The notes under the pieces: generated by a model | The model's input: the letters and a program-made list of their open reading frames with translations, nothing else | Databases searched by the model: none | What the model was told of the DNA's origin: nothing | Origin: Dimorphilus gyrociliatus | Lineage: Eukaryota > Animalia > Annelida | NCBI GenBank assembly: GCA_904063045.1 | Contig: CAJFCJ010000083.1 | Span: 1-64,000 of the forward strand | Length of the DNA: 64,000 nt | Direction of reading: 5' to 3' | Translations under genes and position numbers: made by a program | Shown: one piece after another, positions 1 through 53,924 of the stretch | How positions within the stretch are numbered: the first letter of the stretch is position 1 | Layout: every line of letters begins with the position of its first letter

Positions 1-2128
1 TTCTTGTTGGGAATCTAATTGTTCAGAGATGATTTTAGTCTCATCTAAAAATATACTGACTCATTGTCTGTGTCACTTGTATTTCTTCTCATCTTGGGAT
101 GAATCACCACTATGAGGGACTCATTATCGAATGGTTATGTCAATAATTTCACCTTCAATAATTATTGACTCATTATCCGAATGGTTATATCAATAATTTC
201 GCTTTCAAATTATTGACTCATTGTCTGAACTAGATATTTCATCTCTCTATCAAGAATAATGTTTGCCTCTGAATCTGTATTTTGATCCAGTTCATTATTT
301 GTTTCTGTGTCATCACTTTCAGATGAGCTTGAAGGTTCATTGAGACTGTAATTACTGTCTGTTTAAAGTATTGCTTGTGTCATAACCAGTATCAGAATTA
401 GTAACTTCCATCTCTGAGTCATCACTATCTAGCTTTCTGATGAAGAGTCATGCTGTCCCATCATGGCTATAGTGACTTTGTTAGTTGAGGTTGCCTTATT
501 CTTTCAGCCAGGTTCCCTTTCCTTCTATCAAATTTGAGAGAACACTGTTTAGCTTCAAAATTGAGGTTTGCTCCCACAGTTGTAGGAAATCACAACCAAG
601 TTTATTGCTATGTTAGATTTCCATAACTATAAATTCTTGTTCCATACTTTCTCCAGCAAATTGGATATTCAGCTTTACGCTTCCTTTTGCTTTAAAGCTT
701 TCCCATCAGCTGAAGTTATAATTGGTAAGCCAATTGTTCTTATCCATAATTGTAACATCCATTAACTTGATTTCTTTTTCAGTAATAAAGATCTCAATGC
801 TCCGTGTCACACAAGGCAATGACTTCTTGGCCTTTTTGATCTTCAAACGAATTGAAGTCATTTCTTCCTTCTACCTGAGAAAGATATTGGAGTGTGTTAT
901 TTCCTTCTCCACAAGGTGAAAGATTGTTGTTGCTTCTTCCCTGTTTCCAACTTATTAGATTCATTGCTAGTCTTAATCTGCTACCATGTACCAACTTGCA
1001 TGTATTATCATCCATTTGATTTCATATATCCACTTTTGATGATTGACTTTTGTTATTCGGTATGGCCTAACCATTTTAAAGAAGGATTTTGTTATTGCAA
1101 TTCTTGCAGCATCATTCTTAAGAATACTTCATCATCAACCTCAAAATATTTTGGAAGATTGAGATTTCTATTCTTTCTTTCCCTATATTGTTCTTTTGCC
1201 AGATGATTTACAGAAGGCTGTAGCTCTTAACTTACAATTGCTGCTGGTGATTAATACAAATAGTACATTTGTTTCAGGAGAGGTAGTATGCATTGTTACA
1301 TCAATCAGTGTTCTTGTGCTGTGCCAAAAAGAAGTTCCTGGGTGGTAGTCTTGTACTTCCTACAGGTGATTGATTCAAAAATGCTTGAATCAAGGTAGGT
1401 TTGCAACCCAGTATGCTGATTTTCTTCCACCACTAATTTATTGATTTCCTTCCTCACTTCTCATTTCTTCGTTCAACTAGTCCATTGCTCTGGCTTCTAT
1501 AAGCTGTTGTTTGGATTTTCTCAATACCTAATACCTTCATAAACTCTTTAAAAGCTTTACCAACAAAGTTTCTTCCTTATCTGTCAACATTTGTTTTGGA
1601 ATCCAAAAATGGGAAAAAATCTGTTGAAAAGAAGTTTGCAATTTCTTTACTGGTTCTGTTTGAGTGCATATAAAACTGTGTATCTACTAAATGATCCACT
1701 ATCACAAGTATGAATCTGTATGCTTAACCATGGGTAAGGGTCCCATTATATCCATGGCTACCAACTCCATTGGTGATGCAGGTGAAAGTTTCTACCAAAG
1801 GTATACTCTACTCCTACCATTCATTTGTTCACACAAAGTGCAATCCTTTATTGAATTCTCAATCATAATCTTTAATTTTGGTGCCAAAAGTCTTTGTAAT
1901 TATTTGTAATGTCATTCTGGTCCATGGTGATTGTGAATTTTATTTTTATGGAATTTAGGAGCAGATTAGCATCAAATGGTCAGGTAAAACCAGAATGTTT
2001 CTTTCTTCAAGGATAATCCAGATCATTTCCTTGTGAACAAACATCTCCATTATGAAAGGTGTAAAAGTTCCAAAATAAGAATAGGTAGCTGACCATCCAT
2101 GTTAAATATTCTTTAATTGATTTTAAAT
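1..2128 (-). pseudogene. Integrase + second aspartic protease + acidic linker of copy 1, broken by many 1-bp deletions (probably consensus errors)
   Basis: Near-identical to 11855-14030 apart from scattered single-base, mostly homopolymer deletions; the ORF 794..1015 retains VIALCDT. Confidence 0.88.
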
Positions 2129-5100
2129 TCACATCTTTTCTTGCTCTGACTGTAAGTCAACAGAAGACAAATCAATTTTCTCTTCACTGTTATCACTGGT
2201 AGCTACAAAAGTTAACTCTGGTGTATGTTCATACTGTTCCATTTTAACTGAAATAGAGGGAGAATTCTCCTTTTTGATCTTTCCATGAATTAGCTCTTCA
2301 AATGTTACTTTCCTTGGGGGTGTATATTCTTCTAATCTTGTTAATGCATCTGCTCTATTTTTTCGTCCTGTCACATAGTTAATTGTAAATTTTAAATCCA
2401 TTAAAGCCATGACCCATTTTGCTGTGCTGACATTCAATTTGTTTTGCTTAAATGTTTGTACTAGACTCTGATGGTCAGTATATAAAAAGAATGGCTTGTC
2501 TTGAAGGTAATGTAAAAATTTCTTTACAACCCAGTAAACACCAAATGCTTCCTTTTGATAGGCTGCATATTTCATTTGATTATTGTTGAATTGTTTTGAA
2601 GCGTAGGCAATGGGTTTCATTGTTTTCTTCCCATTCTCATCTACATAAACTTGTTCAAGAACTCCTCCTACAGCTACATTCGATGCATCTGTTGTTAAGT
2701 GAAAATCTTTAGCAAAATCAGGTAGTTGTAATACAGGAGGGTTAACTACTGCATCTCTCAACTTGAAAAATGATTGCTTGGCTTCCTCAGTCCATTGCAA
2801 TTTATCCTTTTTCCCATGTAGTTTCATTAACATATACAGAGGTTTAGCTACTCTTGCAAAATCTTGTATAAATTTTCTGTAATAGCCACAAAATGCAACA
2901 AAGCTTAGTAGTGAATTTGCAAACACTGGTGGCTGTAAATTATATAATTTATCTGTCTTGGACTTATCTGTTTCAATCCCCTTTTCTGATACAATGTGTC
3001 CCAAGAATTGAACTTGTTCTTTCAAAAACACACATTTACTTAGTTTAATCTTAAAATTGTACTTTTGAATCTGTTGAAGAATGGTCTCCAATGCTTCCCA
3101 ATGTTGGTCCAGCGACTTGGTAAATATTATTATGTCATCAAGGTAGTTTAGGCACAAATGCTTTACATCCTTTAGCACAAATGAATTCATTACATAACTA
3201 AAATGAGGAGGGGCATTGGTTAATCCAAAAGGCATCTTAATAAATTCAAACAAGCCAAAAGGTGTAATAAATGCTGTTTTAGACCTATCTTCTTTCTTGA
3301 TGTTAATGTGGTGGTATGCACTTGTCAAATCCATTGTAGAAAAGAATTTATTTCCTCCTCCCAAATGGTCAAAAAGATCATCTTGATTTGGCAGTGGATA
3401 CTTGTTTTTAACTGTCATTTTGTTTAGTTTTCTATAATCTACACACATTCGTAGACTACCTTCCTTCTTTCTTACGAAAACAATTGGTGAAGCCCAATTG
3501 CTCTTGCTTGGTTGAATAACTTTGCTTTTTACCAATTCAGCTATCTGTTGCTTACATTCTTCTTGTTTTTGAGGAGGCATTCTATATGGCCTTTGTCTAT
3601 ATGGTGTTGAACCTGGTTCAAGAGTTATTTCCAAGGGTGGTACCTCTGGATTGCCAATATCAAATCTGTCTTCTGCAATAGTTTCTTTATATTTTGCCAG
3701 AATTTGGGTAACTTTGTTCTTCATCTCGGGATTTTCTTGTTCAATTGTTGTCTGAAGGGTATGTATTTGACTCTCATTCTTTTTCATAATAAGAGGAACT
3801 GGGTAAAACCCTTTGAAAGATAAGTGTTGTGTTCCAACAGGGTAATTCTTTTCTGTACCTGGCTGGAGTATAATCTGTCTCTTGCCAAAGTCAAGGGTAG
3901 CTCCATTTTGTTGTAGAAAGTCACACCCAATAATACATTGTTGTGTAATGATTTTGTTGATCAGAAAGCGTTGTTTAATAATCTTTTCATTAAAATAAAG
4001 TCTGAGAATGATTTCTCCACATATCTCGATGCTATTTCCTGAAGCATCTCTAGCATTTTTCACAGTTTGTTCTGGGAAGGATGCTTTTCCTTGAACTTGT
4101 CTTAATACCTTTTTTGAAATGAAAGATCTGTCACTACCAGAGTCTATCAAGGCATCAAACTTAAAACCAGTATTAGTTTCAAATTGTCCAATAAATGTTG
4201 AAGCATTTCGCTCAGATTGTTTGCTTTGTAACAGCTGACAAGTGGATTCGTCACTATCTGAAAAACAGAGAATATCTTGAACTTCGTCGTTTTCTGACAT
4301 GCTTTCATTGTCTAATGTTTCTAATTTTTGTAGCTTAGGTTCCTCTTTCAGTATCGTCTTTGCTGGTTGATTTTTCTTATAATACCTATTTGTTGTAGTT
4401 GGTGCATACTTTTGGACTTTTTGGCTTGAAAACTTTTCTTTAGTAGCATTTTTGTTGTCAGGTACATGCTTTCTATTCCAGAAATTTGGGGTTTCTGTAG
4501 AAGCATCTTTTCTGATTACCTGGGTCTTTTTGGTCTCTTTTCTTTGTTGAGTTTCCAATTTTGACACCATTGTGATCAGTTTTCTTTGAGTTAGTTTTAA
4601 TGAAGTTTCTGCTTGCTTAGCAGCCTCATATAGTTCTGCCAATGTTTGACATTTAGGATGTAAGGTGTACACTAAATGTAGAATATCCTGTTGTAATCCT
4701 CTTTGTAAAACTTCCATCAGTTTTATTTCTTTCATAGTTGCAAGCAATTGTGGTTCCATTGGTCTAGGTGGAGAAAACCTCTTTATCAATTTCTTTGCTC
4801 TATTAACAAACTGAACCACACTTTCGCCATTCATTTGCTTTAAGTTAAGCAATTTCTCCTGATACTCCAAAGGATCTAGATCAAATTCGTCATGGAGGGC
4901 TTTCCATATTTCCTCCACAGTAGGCTCTCCATCCAGAGCCAACACCAAATCCTTTGCAGGACCAGTTAAATAATCTAAAAGATTTGCTTTCACAACATCT
5001 TCTCCTATCCAACCATAAGCATAACATGCCTGATTAAAGTCTTCTTTGAATTTTGAACACTCCTTGCTTCCATCATACAACTTGAGAATAGTTCTTTGAG

Positions 5101-5371
5101 GGCGGTCCCAAGCAGCCCTTAATGCTTGAATTACTGTTGTGATATCAACATTTGGGTTCTGTGCTGGGTGATGTGTTCCATCTCCATGATCTGTTGGAAT
5201 TGTGATTCGATTTCTTTTCATTTCACTCACCAATCTATCATAGTCTTCAATTAGTCTCTGTTGCCTTTCTGGCATTTCTGCTGGCTGAATTGTAATTGTT
5301 GGAGTTGCTGGGGTTGAAGGGTTAGAGTCTGTAACTGCCCCAGTGGCATTTCCATTTCCTCCTTCTGCCAT
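2129..5371 (-). CDS. Gag-protease-RT-RNase H polyprotein of copy 1 (single frame, no gag/pol frameshift)
   Basis: Protease LIDSGS...IIGCDFL; RT RMCVDYRKLN, MPFGLTNAP, YLDDIIIF; RNase H TTDAS, KEAFGV, TDHQSL, NRADALTR. First ATG after the PBS is MAEGG at 5371. Gag has no CCHC knuckle. Confidence 0.95.
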   Translation of the reverse strand: MAEGGNGNATGAVTDSNPSTPATPTITIQPAEMPERQQRLIEDYDRLVSEMKRNRITIPTDHGDGTHHPAQNPNVDITTVIQALRAAWDRPQRTILKLYDGSKECSKFKEDFNQACYAYGWIGEDVVKANLLDYLTGPAKDLVLALDGEPTVEEIWKALHDEFDLDPLEYQEKLLNLKQMNGESVVQFVNRAKKLIKRFSPPRPMEPQLLATMKEIKLMEVLQRGLQQDILHLVYTLHPKCQTLAELYEAAKQAETSLKLTQRKLITMVSKLETQQRKETKKTQVIRKDASTETPNFWNRKHVPDNKNATKEKFSSQKVQKYAPTTTNRYYKKNQPAKTILKEEPKLQKLETLDNESMSENDEVQDILCFSDSDESTCQLLQSKQSERNASTFIGQFETNTGFKFDALIDSGSDRSFISKKVLRQVQGKASFPEQTVKNARDASGNSIEICGEIILRLYFNEKIIKQRFLINKIITQQCIIGCDFLQQNGATLDFGKRQIILQPGTEKNYPVGTQHLSFKGFYPVPLIMKKNESQIHTLQTTIEQENPEMKNKVTQILAKYKETIAEDRFDIGNPEVPPLEITLEPGSTPYRQRPYRMPPQKQEECKQQIAELVKSKVIQPSKSNWASPIVFVRKKEGSLRMCVDYRKLNKMTVKNKYPLPNQDDLFDHLGGGNKFFSTMDLTSAYHHINIKKEDRSKTAFITPFGLFEFIKMPFGLTNAPPHFSYVMNSFVLKDVKHLCLNYLDDIIIFTKSLDQHWEALETILQQIQKYNFKIKLSKCVFLKEQVQFLGHIVSEKGIETDKSKTDKLYNLQPPVFANSLLSFVAFCGYYRKFIQDFARVAKPLYMLMKLHGKKDKLQWTEEAKQSFFKLRDAVVNPPVLQLPDFAKDFHLTTDASNVAVGGVLEQVYVDENGKKTMKPIAYASKQFNNNQMKYAAYQKEAFGVYWVVKKFLHYLQDKPFFLYTDHQSLVQTFKQNKLNVSTAKWVMALMDLKFTINYVTGRKNRADALTRLEEYTPPRKVTFEELIHGKIKKENSPSISVKMEQYEHTPELTFVATSDNSEEKIDLSSVDLQSEQEKM

Positions 5372-5409
5372 ATTTACTTTCTCAAAACTTTTGAATAAAC
5401 CAAAAGAAT

Positions 5410-5427
5410 ATCCTGCCAACTGCACCA
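5410..5427 (-). promoter_or_regulatory. Primer-binding site of copy 1 (variant TGGTGCAGTTGGCAGGAT)
   Basis: 4 nt inside the LTR; 3 differences from the copy 2 PBS. Confidence 0.75.
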
Positions 5428-5431
5428 AATT

Positions 5432-6066
5432 TGAACTGCTCTTGCTGGCAAAATTTATGCATTTGCAAGTTATAACAATACTGGTTCTACTCGAACCTTT
5501 AAACAAATGTTTAAATTAAAACTGTTTATTTGCAATAATAATACTTAAGCAAGTAACAATATGAGAGTTCAATAGCAGAGTAGATAGTTTGTAATAGCAG
5601 GTTGCCAAATTACCAAACTGTCTTCCAATGTTGAGGAGTAGATGGATGGTTCCAGTGGAGGTTGTTTCCAGATGATTTTCCCAGGTCCTTGGGTCCAGAT
5701 GGAAGCTGCATGCCAAATGAGAATAATGAGGATTTATATACTTTGAGGTTTGTCTCTGACATCCAATCATCACTTTACAGTTGCCGAAATGTGTAGTTCA
5801 TATTTATCTTTAGTAACAGGATGTTACAAGGTTCAACATTTAGGAAGGTTAATTGAATTATAACTTGGCCACACCCTAGGCAAGTTAATTAAATTATAAC
5901 TTGGCCAAACCTTTATTGGTAATTAAAGATGAACCTTCAAGCTGACTGATCAGACTTATGTTTGGCCAATGTTATAGCATTTTCTTGCGTAGGTTTTAAG
6001 ATGTACATGTATATGTTGCATAAAATAATAGAGTTCAAGCATGTAAAATATAACCAAAGTTGTACA
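5432..6066 (-). repeat. 5' LTR of copy 1 (635 bp)
   Basis: About 98% identical to the LTRs at 8497 and 17345. The minus strand starts TGTACA; the other end is mutated (TGAACT on +). Confidence 0.95.
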
Positions 6067-7379: not shown

Positions 7380-8496
7380 TTCAACAATTTATGGAAGGCA
7401 AAAATATTTGAAATGCAGCCTTTGTAAGAATCTTATTCATAGGAAATGCACAGGTATGTAACTCTTTAATCAGCTTTCATGTAATTATATTTTTTTAACA
7501 TATTCTTATAGAAACACATAACATACCAATTTGCAAACCTTGTAACAAAAAGAAAATGTACTGTCATGCTCAAGAAGTTAACTAATCTGGAAATTCATCA
7601 ATTCAAAGTAAATTCTGAAGAAAGCTTTATTGATGAAAGAAATAAGATTGCTGCAGTTGAGGAATCAATATTGGAGGATGAAAATCATGTTCTTTCAGAA
7701 TGCCAATCAATGGACCTAGACTCTTTGGAGGAAGTTGAAGAGAATGCTGAAGAATATTGTGAATCATCCACAAAAAGTGATTTTGAGATTGTAAAAGGAG
7801 AAGTAGAAAGGGACATGACATTTTACTGAATGATGGATATTCTTTTGTTGTTAAACATTAAAACACCATCAAGTACTATTTGGGTGTGCAGTGTGAGAAG
7901 TAAGAAGAAAAGATGTGTGGCCAGAATAAGACAAAATGGAAATTTATTTCTCAAAGGCAATTTGGAACATAATCACAACAGAAAAAAGAATTTAGAAGTG
8001 GATATTAAAGTGAAAACAGATTTGAAAATTGTTTGCAGAAGTGATAATCAAACAATCTGGAAGAAGCATTGCTGAAAAAGTTCTTCTATCCTATGAACCC
8101 AATGCAACTTGTCTTCCTGATATCAACTATTTGAAGAGAATGGCAAACTCAAATAGACAAAAGTTTAGGCCAGTGGAACCTAAAGTGTACAACTTTAATT
8201 TAGATGAAACATTTTTGCCTGATGAATTTTTGCAGAAAAGATATTTGTGAAAATGGAGAAAGAATTTTAATCTTTGCAACAAACCATCAGCTGAATTTAT
8301 TATCAAAATCCAACTGTTGGTACATTGATGGTACTTTCAAGATTGTAAAAGAACCATTTTATCAACTTGTCACTATTCACTCATTTGTTAAGAAGAGTGG
8401 TGATATGAAGCAAGTTCCTCTTGTTTTTATTTTTCTGACTTCAAAGCATACCAAAGCATACTTACAAGCATTTCAAGTAAATATTTCATATTATCT
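7380..8496 (+). mobile_element. PHD-like/FLYWCH/MULE (Mutator, Phantom-like) transposase remnant, truncated by an LTR
   Basis: CSLCKNLIHRKC; WVCSVRSKKKRCVARI...HNH (FLYWCH); WYIDGTFKIVKEPFYQLVTIH...VPLVF (MULE); stops and frameshifts present. Confidence 0.85.
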
Positions 8497-9131
8497 TGTA
8501 CTGCTCTTGCTGGCAAAATCTATGTGTTTGCAAGTTATAACAATACTGGTTCTACTCGAACCTTTAAACAAATGTTTAAATTAAAATGGTTTATTCGCAA
8601 TAATAATACTTAAGCAAGTAACAATATCAGAGTTCGATAGCAGAGTAGATAGTTTGTAAAAGCAGGTTGCCAAATTACCAAACTGTCTTCTAATGTTGAG
8701 GAGTAGATGGATGGTTCCAGTGGAGGTTGTTTCCAGATGATTTTCCCAGGTCCTTGGGTCCAGATGGAAGCTGCATGCCAAATGAGAATAATGAGAATTT
8801 ATATACTTTGAGGTTTGTCTCTGACATCCAATCATCACTTTACAGTTGCCGAAATGTGTAGTTCATATTTATCTTTAGTAACAGGATGTTACAAGGTTCA
8901 ACATTTAGGAAGGTTAATTGAATTATAACTTGGCCACACCCTAGGCAAGTTAATTAAATTATAACCTGGCCAAACCTTTATTGGTAATTAAAGATGAGCC
9001 TTCAAGCTGACTAATCAGACTTATGTTTGGCCAATGTTATAGCATTTTCTTGCGTAGGTTTTAAGATGTACATGTATATGTTGCATAAAATAATAGAGTT
9101 CAAGCATGTAAAATATAACCAAAGTTGTACA
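8497..9131 (-). repeat. 3' LTR of copy 2 (635 bp)
   Basis: TGTACTGC...GTTGTACA termini; I count 10 differences from the LTR at 17345. Confidence 0.95.
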
Positions 9132-9145
9132 ACTTCCCCTTCTTT
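9132..9145 (-). promoter_or_regulatory. Polypurine tract
   Basis: Minus strand AAAGAAGGGGAAGT directly abuts the 3' LTR TGTACA. Confidence 0.85.
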
Positions 9146-9161
9146 GTGAAGATGAGTCCCT

Positions 9162-11749
9162 TCATCTTGATTTAATGAGAATTACAGGTGGTTGTTCTTC
9201 TTCATTAGTTTGATGTTGACTAAAGCTACAACTTTGTTTCATTAGTTTTGGGTTTTCAGGAGAGTTATCTGTGCTCTCACTTGGGGTAGCAATTTCTTCT
9301 CTTTGTTTTCTTCTTCCAATAATATAGTTGAAAATGATGATACATACCATTGACACTACAATACTCAAACAAATATTTCGTATGATAACATAAAGTGTTT
9401 TCCCAGGTTTATAGTACCAACTATGGAAAAACTTTTTAATTCCAGATAAATTGGGTACAATGCCATTTTTCTCTGCAACAGTGACCATGTTATCATACCT
9501 TGCCTGCTTCTGTTCCAGTGAACTGATAACTTGCTTAATTTTTGAGTGCTGGTATGCAATATCCTTCTTTACCCATGGTGGAGTAGATCAGCTAATCTGG
9601 CAATTTCAATTTTTGGTTCAGAAAGGTGATTGTGGATATGTAACTGCATGGATTTTGCAGACACAGTGTGAAATCTGCATCCTCTTTCTGAATAATACAC
9701 ATACGTTTTGTCTTCATTGGTTGGTTTTCTTATAGGATTTAATGGGTTGTGAGTTGTTTTGTAGAATAACTTNTTGGCAATTTCAATTTGGTTCAGAAAG
9801 GTGATTGTGGATATGAACTGCATGGATTTTGCAGACACAGTGTGAAATCTGCATCCTCTTTCTGAATAATACACATACGTTTTGTCTTTCATTGGTTGGT
9901 TTCTTATGGTTTAATGGGTTGTGAGTTGTTTTGTAGAATAACTTGTAGACTTACACTCATTATAGGTAATCTCTTCAGGATTGACTTGCTGTAAAACATG
10001 AGTAACTGTTCTACTTGGAAAAGCAGGTTGTTCATGGTGACAAGTAAAAATTGAGAACATTTGTTATTCTTTTTATCATGCTTAAGTCACAAACTACTTC
10101 TGTTGAGGCTATTGGTGAACATTGTTTAATTATAGCTAATTCTCCCATCTGACTACTGTGCATTCCCAACTCATTTGTTAACACTGTGGTCAATTGAGGA
10201 TCCAAATTTGCTAGTAATGCCATCATTCTGCTTCTTTGAACAAATTGATTGCAGAGAAGACTTGACAGCTGTTGGGTAAACTTTTTTAAATTCTTAAAAT
10301 TTGAATCAATACCATGTAGTAAGGTAGATGTTTGGGCAGCTTCTCTCATTTCCAATGGGAATTTGTGGTATGGGTTTTTACTTATCTTATGTTTCATTTT
10401 GCTTCCTTCTTCATCTGCTTTTTAGCCATTCTCATGTGTAGAGTAAAATAAATTCCTTCATAGGTAATCTTAAATTCTCTGGCTGGTGTCCTTTATACCA
10501 TATGCCCAATGTTGGTAATACCTTCCTTCTTTTTGATTCTTTTCTCACTGTATACATATTTTGAAATCGTCACAGATTGTCTTGTTGCCCTTGTCCAATT
10601 GACTGCTTGCAGCATTTCTTGGAATATTAATAGTTATCCAGCTCCAGTAAGATGGACTAATGGGTTGTTGTAGATGATATATCACAACTTCCTTGAGTGT
10701 GCCTTTATTTCTCATTAGTTTATACTTTGTGTTTGTTTCTCTGTACCATTGGTTAAGACTTGGTAAGGGGTTGTTTCGCTTGTATAGTATAATTTGTTCT
10801 TTAACTTTATTGGGATAGTTTAATAGTCGTTTTTCTTCATTTTTGCCAATCTTCTGATATTGTAGCAAATGTATAGGTGTTCCTTGCTTGTTTCCTGTAT
10901 TAAACTCTGTTCCTCCAGTGGTACTAGTACTTTTGTTCCAGGACCACCAATTCCATCAATAAACTTATCTTGATAAGGGATGTCCAGAATAGAATACCCT
11001 GGACAAGAATAGTGACCAGCAAATTTGATACAACTAATTCTGTTGCTAATTTTATCCATGTGATTGTTGCCCAAGTGTGTAATTATTCTTGAGGTTCCTC
11101 AAGACAATAATTGCCTCTTCTGTTTCACAATAGGACTGCCCTGGTAAACAATCTTCCAGGTAGTCCAGATTAGTTGTAATTTTCATATTAGGAGGTTGCC
11201 AATATGCTTTGCCAAACTGGATAATTGTGGTGTATTCCAGCACCTTGGTAGTTGTTGGCCATGTGTAGGCAGCAGGAAACTGATCTTGGTGGATCCAAGT
11301 GTTTCTTTTCACCATTAAAGGTTTTCCTTGAAAAGATCGTTTGTCTTTTACATCTGTCTGCATTGATCATGAGTTACTTTGATAACTGAGTTAACAATCC
11401 TCCTCTTCTTTGCTCCAAAGAAATAGTAAGTGTAAAAATTAGTTCTTAGATACACTTGACATTTTACTGCTCTTGTTTCAATTTCTTCCAAGTTCAATTC
11501 ATAGATATCAGCTGTAATTGTCTTGGTTTCTTGTGATTCTATATTACAAGTTGGCTCATCTGCTAGATCAAATGCCTGGCTTGGTAGTTGGTTAGAACAA
11601 AAGTATAACGGTGGTTTAAATGTTAAGGTAATGTTTGCACTTGTAACATGGGCACCTTGGTAGGATGGTTTTGGGACTGTTATTGAGTGGATGCAGCCAC
11701 AGATCACCATTACAGTCATCACTAGTGGAAGCCACAACATCTGTTTCAT
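9162..11749 (-). CDS. env: Envelope glycoprotein, class III fusogen-like (herpes gB/chuvirus G-like), split by frameshifts
   Basis: Signal-like MKQMLWLPLVMTVMVICGCIHS at 11749, Cys-rich ectodomain across 6 ORF pieces, LLCNQ..NLDPQ..MGELAIIKQC segment, TM LYVIIRNICLSIVVSMVCIIIFNYII followed by GRRKQR, and a stop just before the PPT. Confidence 0.8.
9598..9944. repeat. ~175-bp tandem duplication around a single N (probable contig-join artefact)
   Basis: 9598-9772 is repeated at 9775-9944 with differing homopolymer indels; N at 9773. Confidence 0.85.
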
Positions 11750-11967
11750 GTTAGCTCTTCCTGTGTTGGCTATAGTTGAATGGTTGAAAATTTTGTGTTG
11801 TTGTTCCACTCTGATAGTTATTCCATCTTCTAACTCTATATATTGTGGTTCCACTTCTTGTTGGGAATCTAATTGTTCAGAGATGATTTTAGTCTCATCT
11901 AAAAATATGACTGACTCATTGTCTGTGTCACTTGTATTTTCTTTCTCATCTTGGGATGAATCTACCA

Positions 11968-14157
11968 CTATGAGGACTCATTATCTGAATGGGTTATGTC
12001 AATAATTTCACCTTCAATAATTATTGACTCATTATCCGAATGGGTTATATCAATAATTTCGCTTTCAATAATTATTGACTCATCGTCTGAACTAGATATT
12101 TCATCTTCTCTATCAGAGATAATGTTTGCCTCTGAATCTGTATTTTGATCCAGTTCATTATTTGTTTCTGTGTCATCACTTTCAGATGAGCTTGAAGGTT
12201 CATTGAGACTGTAATTACTGTCTGTTTTGAAAGTATTGCTTGTGTCATAACCAGTATCAGAATTAGTAACTTCCATCTCTGAGTCATCACTATCTGAACT
12301 TTCTGATGAAGAGTCATGCTGTCCCATCATGGCTATAGTGACTTTGTTTAGTTGAGGTTGCCTTATTCTTTCAGCCAGGTTCCCTTTCCTTCTATCAAAT
12401 TTGAGAGAACACTGTTTAGCTTCAAAATTGAGGTTTGCTCCCACAGTTTGTAGGAAATCACAACCAAGTATTATTGCTATGTCTAGATTTTCCATAACTA
12501 TAAATTCTTGTTCCATACTTTCTCCAGCAAATTGGATATTCAGCTTTACGCTTCCTTTTTGCTTTAAAGCTTTCCCATCAGCTGAAGTTATAATTGGTAA
12601 GCCAATTGTTTCTTTATCCATAATTGTAACATCCATTAACTTGATTTCTTTTTCAGTAATAAAGGATCTCAATGCTCCTGTGTCACACAAGGCAATGACT
12701 TCTTGGCCTTTTTGATTCTTCAAACGGAATTGGAAGTCATTTCTTCCTTCTACCTGAGAAAGATATTGGAGGTGTGTTATTTCCTTCTCCACAAGGTGAA
12801 AGATTGTTGTTGCTTCTTTCCCTGTTTCCAACTTATTAGATTCATTGGCTAGTCTTAATCTGCTACCATGTACCAACTTGCATGTATTATCATCCATTTG
12901 TATTTCATATATCCACTTTTGATGATTGACTTTTGTTATTCGGTATGGGCCTAACCATTTTAAAGAAGGGATTTTTGTTATTGCAATTCTTGCAGCATCA
13001 TTTCTTAAGAATACTTCATCATCAACCTCAAAATATTTTGGAAGATTGAGATTTCTATTCTTTCTTTCCCTATATTGTTCTTTTGCCATGATGGATTTAC
13101 AGAAGGCTGTAGCTCTTAACTGTACTAATTGCTGCTGGTGATTGAATACAAATAGTACATTTGTTTCAGGAGAGGTAGTATGCATTGTTACATCAATCAG
13201 TGTTCTTGTGCTGGTGCCAAAAAGAAGTTCCTGGGGTGGTAGTCTTGTACTTCCTACAGGTGATTGATTCAAAAATGCTTGAATCAAGGGTAGGTTTGCA
13301 ACCCAGTTATGCTGATTTTCTTCCACCACTAATTTATTGATTTCCTTCCTCACTTCTCTATTTCTTCGTTCAACTAGTCCATTGCTCTGGCTTCTATAAG
13401 CTGTTGTTTGGATTTTCTCAATACCTAATACCTTCATAAACTCTTTAAAAGCTTTACCAACAAAGTTTCTTCCTTGATCTGTCAACATTTGTTTTGGAAT
13501 TCCAAAAATGGGAAAAAATCTGTTGAAAAGAAGGTTTGCAATTTCTTTACTGGTTTGCTGTTTGAGTGCATATAAAACTGTGTATCTACTGAAATGATCC
13601 ACTATCACAAGTATGAATCTGTATGACTTAACCATGGGTAAGGGTCCCATTATATCCATGGCTACCAACTCCATTGGTGATGCAGGGTGAAAGGTTTCTA
13701 CCAAAGGGTATACTCTACTCCTACCATTCATTTGTTCACACAAAGTGCAATCCTTTATTGAATTCTCAATCATAATCTTTAATTTTGGGTGCCAAAAGGT
13801 CTTTGTAATTATTTGTAATGTCATTCTGGGTCCATGGTGATTGTGAATTTTATTTTTATGGAATTTAGGGAGCAGAGTTAGCATCAAATGGTCAGGTAAA
13901 ACCAGAATGTTTCTTTCTTCAAGGATAATCCAGATCATTTCCTTGTGAACAAACATCTCCATTATGAAAGGTGTAAAAGTTCCAAAATAAGGAATAGGTA
14001 GCTGACCATCCAATGTTAAATATTCTTTAATTGATTTTAAATTCACATCTTTTTCTTGCTCTGACTGTAAGTCAACAGAAGACAAATCAATTTTCTCTTC
14101 ACTGTTATCACTGGTAGCTACAAAAGTTAACTCTGGTGTATGTTCATACTGTTCCAT
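11968..14157 (-). CDS. Integrase (HHCC, DDE, GPY/F) fused to a second retropepsin protease and an acidic tail
   Basis: H..HHG...CTLC; AMDIMGPLP, VDHFSRY, TDQGRNF, NGLVERRN; WLGPYRI; then ALCDTGALRSFI...IILGCDFL; then a D/E/S-rich tail. Confidence 0.93.
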   Translation of the reverse strand: MEQYEHTPELTFVATSDNSEEKIDLSSVDLQSEQEKDVNLKSIKEYLTLDGQLPIPYFGTFTPFIMEMFVHKEMIWIILEERNILVLPDHLMLTLLPKFHKNKIHNHHGPRMTLQIITKTFWHPKLKIMIENSIKDCTLCEQMNGRSRVYPLVETFHPASPMELVAMDIMGPLPMVKSYRFILVIVDHFSRYTVLYALKQQTSKEIANLLFNRFFPIFGIPKQMLTDQGRNFVGKAFKEFMKVLGIEKIQTTAYRSQSNGLVERRNREVRKEINKLVVEENQHNWVANLPLIQAFLNQSPVGSTRLPPQELLFGTSTRTLIDVTMHTTSPETNVLFVFNHQQQLVQLRATAFCKSIMAKEQYRERKNRNLNLPKYFEVDDEVFLRNDAARIAITKIPSLKWLGPYRITKVNHQKWIYEIQMDDNTCKLVHGSRLRLANESNKLETGKEATTIFHLVEKEITHLQYLSQVEGRNDFQFRLKNQKGQEVIALCDTGALRSFITEKEIKLMDVTIMDKETIGLPIITSADGKALKQKGSVKLNIQFAGESMEQEFIVMENLDIAIILGCDFLQTVGANLNFEAKQCSLKFDRRKGNLAERIRQPQLNKVTIAMMGQHDSSSESSDSDDSEMEVTNSDTGYDTSNTFKTDSNYSLNEPSSSSESDDTETNNELDQNTDSEANIISDREDEISSSDDESIIIESEIIDITHSDNESIIIEGEIIDITHSDNESS
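11975..12090 (-). repeat. 51-bp (17-aa) coding tandem repeat ESIIIE(S/G)EIIDITHSDN
   Basis: GACTCAT recurs at 11975, 12026 and 12077. Confidence 0.9.
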
Positions 14158-14219
14158 TTTAACTGAAATAGAGGGAGAATTCTCCTTTTTGATCTTTCCA
14201 TGAATTAGCTCTTCAAATG

Positions 14220-15701
14220 TTACTTTCCTTGGGGTGTATATTCTTCTAATCTTGTTAATGCATCTGCTCTATTTTTTCGTCCTGTCACATAGTTAATTGT
14301 AAATTTTAAATCCATTAAAGCCATGACCCATTTTGCTGTGCTGACATTCAATTTGTTTTGCTTAAATGTTTGTACTAGACTCTGATGGTCAGTATATAAA
14401 AAGAATGGCTTGTCTTGAAGGTAATGTAAAAATTTCTTTACAACCCAGTAAACACCAAATGCTTCCTTTTGATAGGCTGCATATTTCATTTGATTATTGT
14501 TGAATTGTTTTGAAGCGTAGGCAATGGGTTTCATTGTTTTCTTCCCATTCTCATCTACATAAACTTGTTCAAGAACTCCTCCTACAGCTACATTCGATGC
14601 ATCTGTTGTTAAGTGAAAATCTTTAGCAAAATCAGGTAGTTGTAATACAGGAGGGTTAACTACTGCATCTCTCAACTTGAAAAATGATTGCTTGGCTTCC
14701 TCAGTCCATTGCAATTTATCCTTTTTCCCATGTAGTTTCATTAACATATACAGAGGTTTAGCTACTCTTGCAAAATCTTGTATAAATTTTCTGTAATAGC
14801 CACAAAATGCAACAAAGCTTAGTAGTGAATTTGCAAACACTGGTGGCTGTAAATTATATAATTTATCTGTCTTGGACTTATCTGTTTCAATCCCCTTTTC
14901 TGATACAATGTGTCCCAAGAATTGAACTTGTTCTTTCAAAAACACACATTTACTTAGTTTAATCTTAAAATTGTACTTTTGAATCTGTTGAAGAATGGTC
15001 TCCAATGCTTCCCAATGTTGGTCCAGCGACTTGGTAAATATTATTATGTCATCAAGGTAGTTTAGGCACAAATGCTTTACATCCTTTAGCACAAATGAAT
15101 TCATTACATAACTAAAATGAGGAGGGGCATTGGTTAATCCAAAAGGCATCTTAATAAATTCAAACAAGCCAAAAGGTGTAATAAATGCTGTTTTAGACCT
15201 ATCTTCTTTCTTGATGTTAATGTGGTGGTATGCACTTGTCAAATCCATTGTAGAAAAGAATTTATTTCCTCCTCCCAAATGGTCAAAAAGATCATCTTGA
15301 TTTGGCAGTGGATACTTGTTTTTAACTGTCATTTTGTTTAGTTTTCTATAATCTACACACATTCGTAGACTACCTTCCTTCTTTCTTACGAAAACAATTG
15401 GTGAAGCCCAATTGCTCTTGCTTGGTTGAATAACTTTGCTTTTTACCAATTCAGCTATCTGTTGCTTACATTCTTCTTGTTTTTGAGGAGGCATTCTATA
15501 TGGCCTTTGTCTATATGGTGTTGAACCTGGTTCAAGAGTTATTTCCAAGGGTGGTACCTCTGGATTGCCAATATCAAATCTGTCTTCTGCAATAGTTTCT
15601 TTATATTTTGCCAGAATTTGGGTAACTTTGTTCTTCATCTCGGGATTTTCTTGTTCAATTGTTGTCTGAAGGGTATGTATTTGACTCTCATTCTTTTTCA
15701 T
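14220..15701 (-). CDS. Reverse transcriptase-RNase H of copy 2
   Basis: Protein matches copy 1 up to the frameshift. Separated from its neighbours by single homopolymer deletions (T-run ~15900, G-run ~14232) that are absent in copy 1. Confidence 0.95.
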   Translation of the reverse strand: MKKNESQIHTLQTTIEQENPEMKNKVTQILAKYKETIAEDRFDIGNPEVPPLEITLEPGSTPYRQRPYRMPPQKQEECKQQIAELVKSKVIQPSKSNWASPIVFVRKKEGSLRMCVDYRKLNKMTVKNKYPLPNQDDLFDHLGGGNKFFSTMDLTSAYHHINIKKEDRSKTAFITPFGLFEFIKMPFGLTNAPPHFSYVMNSFVLKDVKHLCLNYLDDIIIFTKSLDQHWEALETILQQIQKYNFKIKLSKCVFLKEQVQFLGHIVSEKGIETDKSKTDKLYNLQPPVFANSLLSFVAFCGYYRKFIQDFARVAKPLYMLMKLHGKKDKLQWTEEAKQSFFKLRDAVVNPPVLQLPDFAKDFHLTTDASNVAVGGVLEQVYVDENGKKTMKPIAYASKQFNNNQMKYAAYQKEAFGVYWVVKKFLHYLQDKPFFLYTDHQSLVQTFKQNKLNVSTAKWVMALMDLKFTINYVTGRKNRADALTRLEEYTPQGK

Positions 15702-15874
15702 AATAAGAGGAACTGGGTAAAACCCTTTGAAAGATAAGTGTTGTGTTCCAACAGGGTAATTCTTTTCTGTACCTGGCTGGAGTATAATCTGTCTCTTGCC
15801 AAAGTCAAGGGTAGCTCCATTTTGTTGTAGAAAGTCACACCCAATAATACATTGTTGTGTAATGATTTTGTTGA

Positions 15875-17284
15875 TCAGAAAGCGTTGTTTAATAATCTTT
15901 CATTAAAATAAAGTCTGAGAATGATTTCTCCACATATCTCGATGCTATTTCCTGAAGCATCTCTAGCATTTTTCACAGTTTGTTCTGGGAAGGATGCTTT
16001 TCCTTGAACTTGTCTTAATACCTTTTTTGAAATGAAAGATCTGTCACTACCAGAGTCTATCAAGGCATCAAACTTAAAACCAGTATTAGTTTCAAATTGT
16101 CCAATAAATGTTGAAGCATTTCGCTCAGATTGTTTGCTTTGTAACAGCTGACAAGTGGATTCGTCACTATCTGAAAAACAGAGAATATCTTGAACTTCGT
16201 CGTTTTCTGACATGCTTTCATTGTCTAATGTTTCTAATTTTTGTAGCTTAGGTTCCTCTTTCAGTATCGTCTTTGCTGGTTGATTTTTCTTATAATACCT
16301 ATTTGTTGTAGTTGGTGCATACTTTTGGACTTTTTGGCTTGAAAACTTTTCTTTAGTAGCATTTTTGTTGTCAGGTACATGCTTTCTATTCCAGAAATTT
16401 GGGGTTTCTGTAGAAGCATCTTTTCTGATTACCTGGGTCTTTTTGGTCTCTTTTCTTTGTTGAGTTTCCAATTTTGACACCATTGTGATCGGTTTTCTTT
16501 GAGTTAGTTTTAATGAAGTTTCTGCTTGCTTAGCAGCCTCATATAGTTCTGCCAATGTTTGACATTTAGGATGTAAGGTGTACACTAAATGTAGAATATC
16601 CTGTTGTAATCCTCTTTGTAAAACTTCCATCAGTTTTATTTCTTTCATAGTTGCAAGCAATTGTGGTTCCATTGGTCTAGGTGGAGAAAACCTCTTTATC
16701 AATTTCTTTGCTCTATTAACAAACTGAACCACACTTTCGCCATTCATTTGCTTTAAGTTAAGCAATTTCTCCTGATACTCCAAAGGATCTAGATCAAATT
16801 CGTCATGGAGGGCTTTCCATATTTCCTCCACAGTAGGCTCTCCATCCAGAGCCAACACCAAATCCTTTGCAGGACCAGTTAAATAATCTAAAAGATTTGC
16901 TTTCACAACATCTTCTCCTATCCAACCATAAGCATAACATGCCTGATTAAAGTCTTCTTTGAATTTTGAACACTCCTTGCTTCCATCATACAACTTGAGA
17001 ATAGTTCTTTGAGGGCGGTCCCAAGCAGCCCTTAATGCTTGAATTACTGTTGTGATATCAACATTTGGGTTCTGTGCTGGGTGATGTGTTCCATCTCCAT
17101 GATCTGTTGGAATTGTGATTCGATTTCTTTTCATTTCACTCACCAATCTATCATAGTCTTCAATTAGTCTTTGTTGCCTTTCTGACATTCCTGCTGGCTG
17201 AATTGTAATTGTTGGAGTTGCTGGGGTTGAAGGGTTAGAGTCTGTAACTGCCCCAGTGGCGTTTCCATTTCCTCCTTCTGCCAT
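15875..17284 (-). CDS. Gag-protease of copy 2
   Basis: MAEGG start at 17284; LIDSGSDRSFI motif; few substitutions relative to copy 1. Confidence 0.93.
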   Translation of the reverse strand: MAEGGNGNATGAVTDSNPSTPATPTITIQPAGMSERQQRLIEDYDRLVSEMKRNRITIPTDHGDGTHHPAQNPNVDITTVIQALRAAWDRPQRTILKLYDGSKECSKFKEDFNQACYAYGWIGEDVVKANLLDYLTGPAKDLVLALDGEPTVEEIWKALHDEFDLDPLEYQEKLLNLKQMNGESVVQFVNRAKKLIKRFSPPRPMEPQLLATMKEIKLMEVLQRGLQQDILHLVYTLHPKCQTLAELYEAAKQAETSLKLTQRKPITMVSKLETQQRKETKKTQVIRKDASTETPNFWNRKHVPDNKNATKEKFSSQKVQKYAPTTTNRYYKKNQPAKTILKEEPKLQKLETLDNESMSENDEVQDILCFSDSDESTCQLLQSKQSERNASTFIGQFETNTGFKFDALIDSGSDRSFISKKVLRQVQGKASFPEQTVKNARDASGNSIEICGEIILRLYFNERLLNNAF

Positions 17285-17322
17285 ATTTACTTTCTCAAAA
17301 CTTTTGAATAAACCAAAAGAAT

Positions 17323-17340
17323 ATCCTGTCGACTGCGCCA
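17323..17340 (-). promoter_or_regulatory. Primer-binding site TGGCGCAGTCGACAGGAT, tRNA-Ser type
   Basis: Starts with TGG 4 nt from the LTR. Complementary to a ...ATCCTGTCGACTGCGCCA tRNA 3' end, like the tRNA-Ser PBS of the 17.6/297-type errantiviruses (recalled, not searched). Confidence 0.8.
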
Positions 17341-17344
17341 AATT

Positions 17345-17979
17345 TGTACTGCTCTTGCTGGCAAAATCTATGCGTTTGCAAGTTATAACAATACTGGTTC
17401 TACTCGAACCTTTAAACAAATGTTTAAATTAAAATGGTTTATTCGCAATAATAATACTTAAGCAAGTAACAATATGAGAGTTCAATAGCAGAGTAGATAG
17501 TTTGTAATAGCAGGTTGCCAAATTACCAAACTGTCTTCCAATGTTGAGGAGTAGATGGATGGTTCCAGTGGAGGTTGTTTCCAGATGATTTTCCCAGGTC
17601 CTTGGGTCCAGATGGAAGCTGCATGCCAAATGAGAATAATGAGGATTTATATACTTTGAGGTTTGTCTCTGACATCCAATCATCACTTTACAGTTGCCAA
17701 AATGTGTAGTTCATATTTATCTTTAGTAACAGGATGTTACAAGGTTCAACATTTAGGAAGGTTAATTGAATTATAACTTGGCCACACCCTAGGCAAGTTA
17801 ATTAAATTATAACTTGGCCAAACCTTTATTGGTAATTAAAGATGAACCTTCAAGCTGACTAATCAGACTTATGTTTGGCCAATGTTTTAGCATTTTCTTG
17901 CGTAGGTTTTAAGATGTACATGTATATGTTGCATAAAATAATAGAGTTCAAGCATGTAAAATATAACCAAAGTTGTACA
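17345..17979 (-). repeat. 5' LTR of copy 2 (635 bp)
   Basis: TG..CA ends with TGTAC inverted termini, internal AATTATAACTTGGCCA direct repeat, AATAAA on the minus strand near 17438-17443. Confidence 0.95.
17645..17653 (-). promoter_or_regulatory. Candidate LTR TATA box (TATATAAAT)
   Basis: About 200 bp upstream of AATAAA, with an ATTGG (inverted CCAAT) just upstream of it. Confidence 0.5.
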
Positions 17980-53580: not shown

Positions 53581-53924
53581 CTCTAGTCTTTTTAGATTTC
53601 CTATTACCTTCACAAAACTCTGCTCAAGCTGAAAGAAAGCCTTGTAAGATGGTCTTTTGTTGGCTAAAAGAAGGATTTAAGTGAATGTTGATTAGATATC
53701 CTAAGAGACTACTCCGACTCACTTGATAAAAGAGGAATACCTCTGAAATATTGTGGATTTTTATTTAGTTGGTGGAAAGTAGAACCCTGTAGTTGATGTT
53801 CTCTTCACTCTTGTTCAGAATCTGTCCTTGTGGTTTAAGAGATATAAGAAAAGCTTTAGATCACATTAATTTATACTTAGTGTTGGTTTCTCTGTACCAT
53901 TCATTAAGGCTGGGTAGAATATTG

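What the first reader, a model, noticed from the sequence alone, without database searches (positions are those of the whole stretch)
12400..12740. A second complete retropepsin protease placed AFTER the integrase in a Ty3/gypsy Pol
Seen: downstream of the IN GPY/F motif the same ORF continues into ...EVIALCDTGALRSFITEK...KGSVKLNIQFAGESMEQEFIVMENLDIAIILGCDFL, with the catalytic DTG at 12673-12684 and the G-x-D-F closing motif. The normal protease (LIDSGS...IIGCDFL) is intact after Gag, and the two are clearly divergent, so this is not a recent duplication. Copy 1 carries the same domain (~530-860). Established: Ty3/gypsy Pol is PR-RT-RH-IN, with at most a chromodomain or other small extension after IN. 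I know of no described gypsy lineage with a second protease there. Inference: PR2 is a dedicated enzyme that releases or matures the downstream Env, or cleaves host factors.
Basis: partly seen in the sequence, partly recalled or inferred. Interest (0 to 1): 0.92.

Follow-up and report, generated by a model that had tools for sequence, protein, structure and literature searches.

The report
Second protease after integrase, annelid retroelement
A virus-like LTR retroelement of a small marine worm encodes a second, complete retroviral-type protease fused in frame behind its integrase, a domain order I found described nowhere; the domain is real, but nothing here shows that it is used.

Summary
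On the minus strand, a 729-codon open frame (stop at 11968-11970) runs from a complete integrase (zinc finger, core, GPY) into a full retropepsin domain, PR2. Its core is 12391-12735, with DTGA at 12673-12684 and GCDF at 12454-12465, followed by an acidic tail. PR2 passes four Pfam protease cut-offs. Its model (pLDDT 82) matches DDI1, HIV-1 and EIAV proteases.

The element belongs to the env-bearing Ty3/gypsy family of Dimorphilus gyrociliatus, probably 'Dingle' (Gag 98% identical). PR2 is not a copy of the element's own PR1 (28% identity, never sister in 100 bootstraps). It groups with the ordinary Gag-linked protease of a distant relative and with a second D. gyrociliatus fragment (90/100).

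Limits:
- No other integrase-then-protease protein turned up, and no paper describes one.
- Only two near-identical copies are available, and neither has both proteases uninterrupted as assembled.
- Env is a separate ORF with its own ATG and signal-like stretch, so 'PR2 releases Env' is not supported.

Best reading: a captured or anciently duplicated protease kept as a second, self-releasing Pol protease. This is a new variant of a known kind, and its function is unproven.

The parts
8496..17979 (-). Copy 2 of the LTR element, complete from LTR to LTR (9484 bp). It holds the finding.
   Evidence: Self-BLAST. The LTR ends read TG...CA, with a purine-rich tract before the 3' LTR and a primer-binding-like stretch after the 5' LTR.
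17344..17979 (-). 5' LTR of copy 2 (636 bp)
   Evidence: 98.4% identical to the 3' LTR.
8496..9131 (-). 3' LTR of copy 2 (636 bp)
11968..17284 (-). gag-pol of copy 2, given as one part because it is a broken gene. It covers Gag, PR1, RT, RNase H, IN, PR2 and the acidic tail. The frame is interrupted twice, both frameshift-type: once within PR1 and once in the RNase H-IN linker. The IN-PR2-tail portion is one open frame of 729 codons.
   Evidence: In copy 1 the same stretch from Gag to the start of IN is a single frame.
15764..16081 (-). PR1 of copy 2, the canonical protease after Gag. It is interrupted once (frameshift-type).
   Evidence: Position mapped from copy 1.
14904..15389 (-). Reverse transcriptase domain (copy 2)
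   Evidence: Pfam RVT_1, E 6e-34.
14313..14708 (-). RNase H domain (copy 2)
   Evidence: Pfam RT_RNaseH and RT_RNaseH_2, E 1e-29 and 2e-28.
12853..13896 (-). Integrase: zinc-binding H2C2 13726-13896, catalytic core 13393-13680, GPY motif 12943-12951
   Evidence: Pfam Integrase_H2C2 35.9 bits and rve 50.2 bits. GPY located. No chromodomain hit.
12358..12828 (-). PR2 module (ORF residues 444-600). It comprises a roughly 30-40-aa N-terminal flank that is also conserved in the Gag-PR relative P0003, plus the retropepsin core.
   Evidence: BLASTP to P0003 starts at residue 444, 42% identity over 109 aa. Representative search.
12391..12735 (-). PR2 folded core (ORF residues 475-589)
   Evidence: AF2 model with pLDDT 82.3, pTM 0.75 and confident blocks over residues 21-135 of the query. 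Foldseek hits to DDI1 RVP domains and HIV-1/EIAV protease, probability 1.00. Pfam hits.
12673..12684 (-). Catalytic D-T-G-A of PR2
   Evidence: Direct reading. D38 and G40 of the query are at least 90% conserved across 55 aligned retropepsins.
12454..12465 (-). G-C-D-F of the I-L-G-C-D-F-L motif near the end of PR2
   Evidence: G111 is at least 90% conserved.
11971..12357 (-). Acidic Ser/Asp/Glu-rich tail (residues 601-729), ending with a 51-bp tandem repeat at 11975-12083. The pol stop is at 11968-11970.
   Evidence: No Pfam family.
9162..11749 (-). env-like gene of copy 2, given as one part because it is broken. It has a signal-like hydrophobic stretch just after the first ATG and a transmembrane-like stretch plus a basic tail near the end. 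It is read as six separate ORF pieces, so at least five interruptions (a mix of frame changes and in-frame stops). It also contains a 174-bp tandem duplication and an N.
   Evidence: No Pfam or PDB sequence hit for the pieces.
1..6066 (-). Copy 1 of the same element. It runs off the window start just after the beginning of env, with its 5' LTR at 5431-6066. It is 98.5% identical to copy 2.
   Evidence: one colinear alignment of 6133 columns.
3851..4168 (-). PR1 of copy 1, uninterrupted
   Evidence: Pfam RVP 23.3 and RVP_2 22.2 bits, both above cut-off. AF2 pLDDT 84.5. Retropepsin fold.
530..860 (-). PR2 stretch of copy 1 (a broken part). It differs from copy 2 by 12 small indels, none a multiple of three, and 7 substitutions.
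36064..36711 (+). Solo LTR of the same family, 96% identical to the LTRs. The alignment is to the plus-strand text of the other LTRs, so it has the same orientation as the two copies.

Best explanation
PR2 is a genuine, complete retropepsin domain that forms the C-terminal part of Pol in an env-bearing Ty3/gypsy-type LTR element. The host is the annelid Dimorphilus gyrociliatus or a very near relative, and the family is probably the one published as 'Dingle'. The domain order is Gag-PR1-RT-RH-IN-PR2-acidic tail, followed by a separate env ORF.

Shown:
- The open frame, the profile matches, the catalytic and closing motifs, and the predicted fold.
- The same colinear IN-to-PR2 junction in two separate insertions.
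- PR2 belongs to a protease clade distinct from PR1. That clade includes the ordinary, Gag-linked protease of a distant relative.

Inferred:
- PR2 arose when a protease, together with its short N-terminal flank, was copied behind the integrase. This happened either by recombination with a related element or by an old internal duplication after which PR1 diverged.
- It has been kept as a working enzyme.
- As part of Gag-Pol it would pair with a second PR2 when polyproteins gather, as retropepsins do. It would then cut itself free of the integrase at the inherited flank and serve as a second processing protease beside PR1.
For: - Open frame: 729 codons from IN through PR2. The 294 post-IN codons have no stop, P about 5e-11.
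- Profiles: four Pfam retropepsin families above their curated cut-offs.
- Motifs: DTGA and ILGCDFL are present.
- Fold: AF2 pLDDT 82.3 and pTM 0.75. Foldseek top hits are DDI1 RVP domains and HIV-1/EIAV proteases at probability 1.00.
- Two insertions: the whole stretch is colinear between copy 1 and copy 2 in a single alignment.
- Clade: PR2 vs PR1 is only 28% identical. NJ bootstrap gives PR2+P0001+P0003 90/100 and PR2 sister to PR1 0/100.
- P0003 is a Gag-PR protein. Its Gag aligns colinearly with the window's Gag (24% identity, E 5e-17). Its protease, including about 40 residues before the core, is 42% identical to PR2.
- P0001 (D. gyrociliatus) is 58% identical to PR2 over 113 aa. The alignment runs about 30 residues beyond the protease core into the start of the tail. 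So a diverged second sequence shares the PR2-to-tail context rather than a PR-to-RT context.
- There are no Gag or RT traces on either side of PR2.
- Family assignment: Gag is 98% identical to a D. gyrociliatus protein. The family is described in PMC7854359.
Against: - Function is not shown.
- Only two copies are available, 98.5% identical. PR2 substitutions between them are 3 synonymous and 4 non-synonymous, which has no power.
- The only copy with PR2 open has PR1 interrupted. The copy with PR1 open has PR2 riddled with small indels.
- No other IN-then-PR protein was found among 5.8 billion clusters at comparable length, nor among the 1.84 billion representatives beyond P0001 and P0003.
- P0001 lacks its upstream part, so it is unknown whether an integrase precedes it.
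- P0001 and P0003 each cover only about half of the domain, so the clade rests on short overlaps.
Confidence: 0.55

Rival explanations
1. Passenger domain. PR2 is a piece of another element's protease that a recombination event placed behind the integrase of one young subfamily. It is still open only because the subfamily is young, and it does nothing for the element.
For: - Only two near-identical copies are seen.
- The architecture was not found elsewhere.
- PR2's nearest complete-context relative has it in the ordinary place after Gag.
- No copy has both proteases open.
Against: - PR2 is 42-58% identical to its nearest relatives yet keeps every hallmark and a confident fold. So it has been under constraint for most of its history, in one place or the other.
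- The junctions are clean at domain level and in frame, with a further 129-codon tail also open.
- P0001 shares the PR2-to-tail junction at 58% identity, which suggests the arrangement predates this subfamily.
Confidence: 0.28
2. One reading: PR2 is dedicated to Env, either releasing it from a fused precursor or maturing it.
For: - PR2 is the last folded domain before env.
- The env frame is open for 73 codons upstream of its first ATG, with a Ser/Asp/Glu-rich make-up like the Pol tail.
- From my own knowledge, retroviral proteases are known to trim Env cytoplasmic tails (the R peptide of murine leukaemia virus). Env here ends with a transmembrane-like stretch and a basic tail.
Against: - Pol ends at a stop. 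Env is in another frame, with its own ATG 219 nt on and a signal-like stretch right after it.
- The Pol tail and the env-frame upstream peptide are not significantly alike (E 0.16).
- An ectodomain in the secretory pathway is out of reach of a Pol-borne enzyme (inference).
- PR1 could do any tail trimming, so nothing ties PR2 to Env.
Confidence: 0.07
3. Non-catalytic or partner role. PR2 serves as a dimerising module for the integrase, or pairs with PR1 to make an asymmetric protease.
For: - Retropepsin folds are obligate dimers (general knowledge).
- Extensions after IN in this superfamily are usually targeting or assembly modules such as chromodomains (general knowledge).
- Both PR1 and PR2 model as complete half-proteases.
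Against: - The catalytic DTGA is intact, which a pure dimerising role would not require.
- No evidence of any PR1-PR2 interface. Only single-chain modelling was available.
Confidence: 0.07
4. Artefact. The IN-PR2 junction is a mis-assembly, or a nested insertion of a foreign element fragment in this one locus.
For: The assembly shows signs of imperfect polishing: an N in env, 50 one- or two-base deletions confined to one part of copy 1, and a 100% identical 3.25-kb palindrome nearby.
Against: - The same junction is present in two insertions with different flanks, in one colinear alignment.
- There are no LTR, Gag or RT traces around PR2.
- PR2 is in frame on both sides.
Confidence: 0.02

Closest known systems
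'Dingle' (Dinophilidae Gypsy-like elements), the main LTR family of Dimorphilus gyrociliatus (Martin-Duran et al. 2020, PMC7854359)
   Same: Gag is 98% identical to a D. gyrociliatus protein. It is a Ty3/gypsy-type Pol with an extra ORF downstream of the integrase that looks like an envelope gene. The paper describes exactly such a family as the most abundant one in that genome.
   Different: The paper's text, methods, legends and held supplements never mention a second protease. Its domain figure could not be read here. I had no Dingle reference sequence, so membership is inferred. The published likeness of Env to herpesvirus glycoprotein B was not reproduced with the broken env pieces of this copy.
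Canonical Ty3/gypsy (Metaviridae-type) protease between Gag and RT
   Same: PR2 has the same fold, motifs and profile families. Its nearest relative with known context (P0003) sits in that canonical place.
   Different: PR2 lies after the integrase, and a canonical PR1 is present as well.
Other extra or doubled Pol domains in LTR elements: chromodomain after IN (chromoviruses) and a second RNase H in some plant and oomycete lineages (from my own knowledge, not tested here)
   Same: A domain is added to or doubled within Pol, at or after the integrase end.
   Different: Here the added domain is a protease. No chromodomain is present.
Cellular retropepsin-like proteins (DDI1 RVP domain, ASPRV1/SASPase)
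   Same: These are the best structural matches and the best PDB sequence match, 'Retroviral-like aspartic protease 1', E 0.03.
   Different: Those are host genes outside any element. PR2 is in frame with an integrase between two LTRs.
Proteins with two retropepsin domains in tandem (P0007, P0039 in the protein collection)
   Same: Two retropepsin domains in one chain.
   Different: Those domains are adjacent, with no RT or IN between them. Their origin is unknown.

Membership tests
Retropepsin (peptidase family A2; Pfam RVP / RVP_2 / gag-asp_proteas / Asp_protease_2) | Profile match above the curated cut-off | tested here: met
   RVP_2 31.7 bits (cut-off 20.3), gag-asp_proteas 29.8 (28.2), RVP 27.3 (20.7), Asp_protease_2 26.7 (24.3).
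Retropepsin (peptidase family A2; Pfam RVP / RVP_2 / gag-asp_proteas / Asp_protease_2) | Catalytic Asp-Thr/Ser-Gly(-Ala) triad | tested here: met
   D-T-G-A at 12673-12684. The Asp and Gly columns are at least 90% conserved among 55 aligned homologues.
Retropepsin (peptidase family A2; Pfam RVP / RVP_2 / gag-asp_proteas / Asp_protease_2) | Hydrophobic-Gly-x-Asp motif near the C-terminal end of the domain | tested here: met
   I-L-G-C-D-F-L, with GCDF at 12454-12465. This motif is identical in P0001.
Retropepsin (peptidase family A2; Pfam RVP / RVP_2 / gag-asp_proteas / Asp_protease_2) | Retropepsin half-barrel fold | tested here: met
   AF2 pLDDT 82.3. Foldseek matches DDI1, HIV-1 and EIAV proteases at probability 1.00, TM up to 0.76 on the target.
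Retropepsin (peptidase family A2; Pfam RVP / RVP_2 / gag-asp_proteas / Asp_protease_2) | Homodimer formation and proteolytic activity | not testable with these tools
   Only single-chain modelling was available, and there is no biochemical evidence.
Ty3/gypsy-type (Metaviridae-like) LTR retroelement | Two LTRs with TG...CA ends, a primer-binding-like site and a polypurine tract | tested here: met
   636-bp LTRs, 98.4% identical. Ends and tracts read. A target-site duplication was not evident.
Ty3/gypsy-type (Metaviridae-like) LTR retroelement | Pol order PR-RT-RNase H-IN, with a GPY/F module in IN | tested here: met
   The order is met, with an extra protease after IN.
Dingle family of D. gyrociliatus | Close sequence identity to D. 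gyrociliatus element proteins | tested here: met
   Gag is 98% identical over the shared 44% of the query to P0262, 'unnamed protein product [Dimorphilus gyrociliatus]'. No named Dingle reference was available.
Dingle family of D. gyrociliatus | Env resembling herpesvirus glycoprotein B | tested here: inconclusive
   No Pfam or PDB sequence hit for the separate env pieces. The published likeness came from a profile of ten copies, which I did not build.
Chromovirus-type IN extension | Chromodomain after the integrase | tested here: not met
   No Chromo hit at E up to 0.1.

The most novel reading that the evidence does not exclude
This annelid family carries a fixed PR-RT-RH-IN-PR Pol in which both proteases are active and share the work. 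They would either have different substrates or pair as an asymmetric PR1:PR2 enzyme. The arrangement would be conserved across diverged subfamilies. That would make it the first two-protease lineage among Ty3/gypsy-type elements.
Probability: 0.35. Interest if true: 0.75.

Novelty: new variant of a known kind. Interest (0 to 1): 0.6.

Why it matters
The order of Pol domains is one of the most stable traits of LTR retroelements and retroviruses, and it is used to classify them. A lineage that keeps a second protease behind the integrase would add a new architecture.

It would also give a natural case for two questions. How does a polyprotein with two dimerising proteases time its own processing? 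And do retroelements swap single enzyme domains between lineages?

If PR2 proves to be a passenger, it is still a clean example of domain-level recombination between related elements.

Tried and rejected
- **P0002** (5434 aa, second-best hit) is a filamin-like repeat protein. Its score is the sum of 22 very weak repeats. Discarded.
- **P0028** (2337 aa) has an RVP about 750 residues after a chromodomain-bearing IN and a partial PR at its start. It looks like two elements run together in one gene model, so I did not count it as a precedent (not tested further).
- **Fish and other 'GIN1-like' proteins** with both rve and RVP all have the protease before the integrase.
- **dN/dS between the two copies** has too few changes to say anything: 3 synonymous vs 4 non-synonymous in PR2.
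- **Copy 1 as evidence of decay** was rejected. It has 0 substitutions across about 1.8 kb of PR1-RH. Then there are 52 one- or two-base indels, 50 of them deletions in copy 1, in the next 2.4 kb, against 26 substitutions. That ratio looks like assembly error rather than neutral decay, but I could not prove this.
- **Third, diverged relative in the window** (scraps at 46.8-47.1 kb and 53.8-54.4 kb) holds no IN or PR2.
- **Env pieces** gave no Pfam or PDB sequence hit.
- **Pol tail vs env-frame upstream peptide**: no significant similarity.
- **No tRNA gene** in the window to match the primer-binding site.
- **A target-site duplication** was not evident.
- **Four literature searches** for a second protease in LTR elements found nothing relevant. 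The library lacks most subscription journals.

Full report
**What is there.** The finding lies on the minus strand of a complete LTR element.
- Copy 2 spans 8496-17979, with 636-bp LTRs that are 98.4% identical. The LTR ends read TG...CA, with a polypurine tract and a primer-binding-like site.
- Copy 1 spans 1-6066, is 98.5% identical, and runs off the window start.
- A solo LTR lies at 36064-36711. Scraps of a more diverged relative lie at 46.8-47.1 kb and 53.8-54.4 kb.
- In copy 1, Gag, PR1, RT, RNase H and the start of IN form one frame.
- In copy 2, that frame is interrupted twice, both frameshift-type: once within PR1 and once in the RNase H-IN linker. The IN-PR2-tail part is a single open frame of 729 codons ending at 11968-11970.

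**The observation.** Pfam finds the following in that frame:
- Integrase_H2C2 at residues 88-144
- rve at residues 160-255
- a retropepsin domain at about residues 483-586

Taken alone, the 146-aa PR2 piece exceeds the curated cut-offs of RVP_2, gag-asp_proteas, RVP and Asp_protease_2. An AlphaFold model built on 55 homologues has pLDDT 82.3 and pTM 0.75, with a confident core at ORF residues 475-589. Its best structural matches are the retropepsin domains of DDI1 and the proteases of HIV-1 and EIAV, all at probability 1.00.

PR1 of copy 1 also passes RVP and RVP_2. It models equally well (pLDDT 84.5) with the same fold.

The 294 codons after the integrase carry no stop. That has P about 5e-11 from composition, none of 20000 shuffles was stop-free, and the other two frames carry 22 and 42 stops.

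**Two corrections to the observation.**
- In copy 2, which holds the open PR2, PR1 carries one frameshift-type interruption.
- In copy 1, which holds the open PR1, the IN, PR2 module and tail differ from copy 2 by 25, 12 and 8 small indels. None is a multiple of three.

Of the 52 indels in that part of the alignment, 50 are one- or two-base deletions in copy 1. Only 26 substitutions accompany them. The preceding 1.8 kb (PR1 to RNase H) has no difference at all. That pattern looks more like imperfect assembly than decay, but I cannot prove it. As assembled, no copy has both proteases open.

**Whose element it is.** The Gag query found one protein: P0262, 'unnamed protein product [Dimorphilus gyrociliatus]', 98% identical over the shared part. 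The best PR2 hit, P0001, is also from D. gyrociliatus.

The genome paper for that worm describes its most abundant repeat as a new Ty3/gypsy family, 'Dingle'. The family has an envelope gene downstream of the integrase that resembles herpesvirus glycoprotein B (PMC7854359). The window's element fits that description and very probably belongs to the family.

The paper's text, methods, legends and held supplements never mention a second protease. Its domain figure is not readable here.

**Where PR2 comes from.**
- PR1 and PR2 are 28% identical.
- In the search of 1.84 billion representatives, only two proteins are close to PR2; all others are generic retropepsins at 37% identity or less.
- P0001 is a gene model whose first 100 or so residues are the C-terminal half of a PR2-like domain joined to a TIR-domain host protein. 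It is 58% identical to PR2 over 113 aa. The alignment runs about 30 residues past the protease core into the beginning of the tail.
- P0003 (656 aa, ENA) is a Gag-PR protein. Its Gag aligns colinearly with the window's Gag (24% identity, E 5e-17). Its protease, in the ordinary place, is 42% identical to PR2, including about 40 residues ahead of the core.
- In a neighbour-joining analysis of 44 protease domains, PR2+P0001+P0003 group in 90 of 100 bootstraps. PR2 is never sister to PR1.

So PR2 is not a recent copy of PR1. It belongs to a protease lineage that serves as the normal protease in a distant relative.

It came to lie behind the integrase together with its N-terminal flank. No Gag or RT traces accompany it on either side. 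This happened either by recombination with such a relative or by an old duplication after which PR1 diverged. The data cannot tell which. Both P0001 and P0003 cover only about half the domain, so this clade rests on short overlaps.

**Is the arrangement found elsewhere?**
- A word-indexed search with the PR2 region, among proteins 0.55-1.75 times the ORF length, found only P0001.
- The nearest integrase relatives are only about 30% identical.
- Six of them that list both rve and RVP were scanned, and in every one the protease precedes the integrase.
- P0028 has a protease far downstream of a chromodomain-bearing integrase. It looks like two elements in one gene model.
- Four literature searches found no description of a protease after the integrase.
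- From my own knowledge, known extensions after IN are chromodomains and similar small modules, and some lineages carry a doubled RNase H. I know of no doubled protease.

Pol ends at a stop. The env frame has its first ATG at 11749-11747, 219 nt further on, followed at once by a hydrophobic signal-like stretch. The last env piece ends with a transmembrane-like stretch and a basic tail.

Env of copy 2 is read as six separate ORF pieces, so at least five interruptions. It holds a 174-bp tandem duplication and an N.

Env is therefore a separate gene, not a precursor fused to PR2, so PR2 is not needed to release it. The env frame is open for 73 codons upstream of its ATG with a make-up like the Pol tail, but the two are not significantly alike (E 0.16).

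A Pol-borne protease could reach only a cytoplasmic tail of Env. Retroviral proteases do trim such tails in some retroviruses (my own knowledge), but nothing ties that role to PR2 rather than PR1.

**How it most likely works (inference).**
- PR2 is made as the C-terminal part of Gag-Pol.
- Like all retropepsins, it would be active only as a dimer, so it would switch on when polyproteins are concentrated.
- The flank it shares with the Gag-PR junction of P0003 is a plausible site for cutting itself off the integrase.
- It would then act beside PR1.

I put the domain itself at about 0.9 (real, in frame, complete). That it is a maintained, working enzyme I put at about 0.5. The overall statement stands at 0.55.

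The main rival is a passenger domain in a young subfamily (0.28). Against that rival:
- PR2 has stayed a perfect retropepsin while diverging 42-58% from its nearest kin.
- The 129-codon tail is also open.
- P0001 shares the PR2-to-tail junction.

- I did not fetch genomic DNA around the relatives P0001 and P0003, or around further copies of the family in public assemblies. This is the main gap. It would show whether an integrase precedes the P0001 protease and how widespread the order is.

**Verdict.** This is a new variant of a known kind: an annelid Ty3/gypsy-type family, probably Dingle, whose Pol carries a second, lineage-distinct retropepsin after the integrase. Interest 0.6.

Noticed in passing
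window 18532-21785 and 28785-32038: Perfect (100%) inverted repeat of 3254 nt, with 6999 nt between the arms. Each arm carries ORFs with LDL-receptor class A, leucine-rich-repeat-like and rhodopsin-type 7TM parts, suggesting an LGR-like receptor gene. It is either a very recent inverted duplication or an assembly palindrome.
   Followed up: partly
window 1-2100 (copy 1, IN to env start): There are 50 one- or two-base deletions relative to copy 2 within 2.4 kb, next to 1.8 kb with no difference at all. This looks like poor polishing of one repeat copy rather than decay.
   Followed up: partly
window 36064-36711: Solo LTR of the same family, 96% identical to the LTRs of the two copies.
   Followed up: no
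window 46798-47089 and 53846-54440: Scraps of a more diverged relative of the element. One piece covers the PR1 end and RT start (71% aa identity to copy 1). There are also short env-like pieces in mixed orientation. No IN or PR2 is present.
   Followed up: partly
window 9598-9944: 174-bp tandem duplication (two copies, 96% matches) in the 3' part of the env-like gene, with an ambiguous base inside it.
   Followed up: no
window 8204-8584 (+): MULE-transposase-like ORF (weak Pfam hit, E 0.007) abutting and slightly overlapping the 3' LTR of copy 2. The D. gyrociliatus paper lists MULE among that genome's DNA transposons.
   Followed up: no
window 33375-35270 (-): 631-aa ORF combining chitin-binding peritrophin-A, thrombospondin type 1 and C1q domains. 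It is probably a host gene.
   Followed up: no
window 11975-12083: 51-bp tandem repeat (2.1 copies) at the very end of the Pol acidic tail, just before the stop.
   Followed up: no
proteins P0007 and P0039 (not in the window): Database proteins with two retropepsin domains in tandem in one chain. Their origin is unknown.
   Followed up: no
proteins P0001 and P0262 (D. gyrociliatus annotation): Two annotated host gene models begin with pieces of this element family: the PR2 half in P0001 and the Gag N-terminus in P0262. These pieces are fused to unrelated sequence, so the models are likely chimeric.
   Followed up: partly
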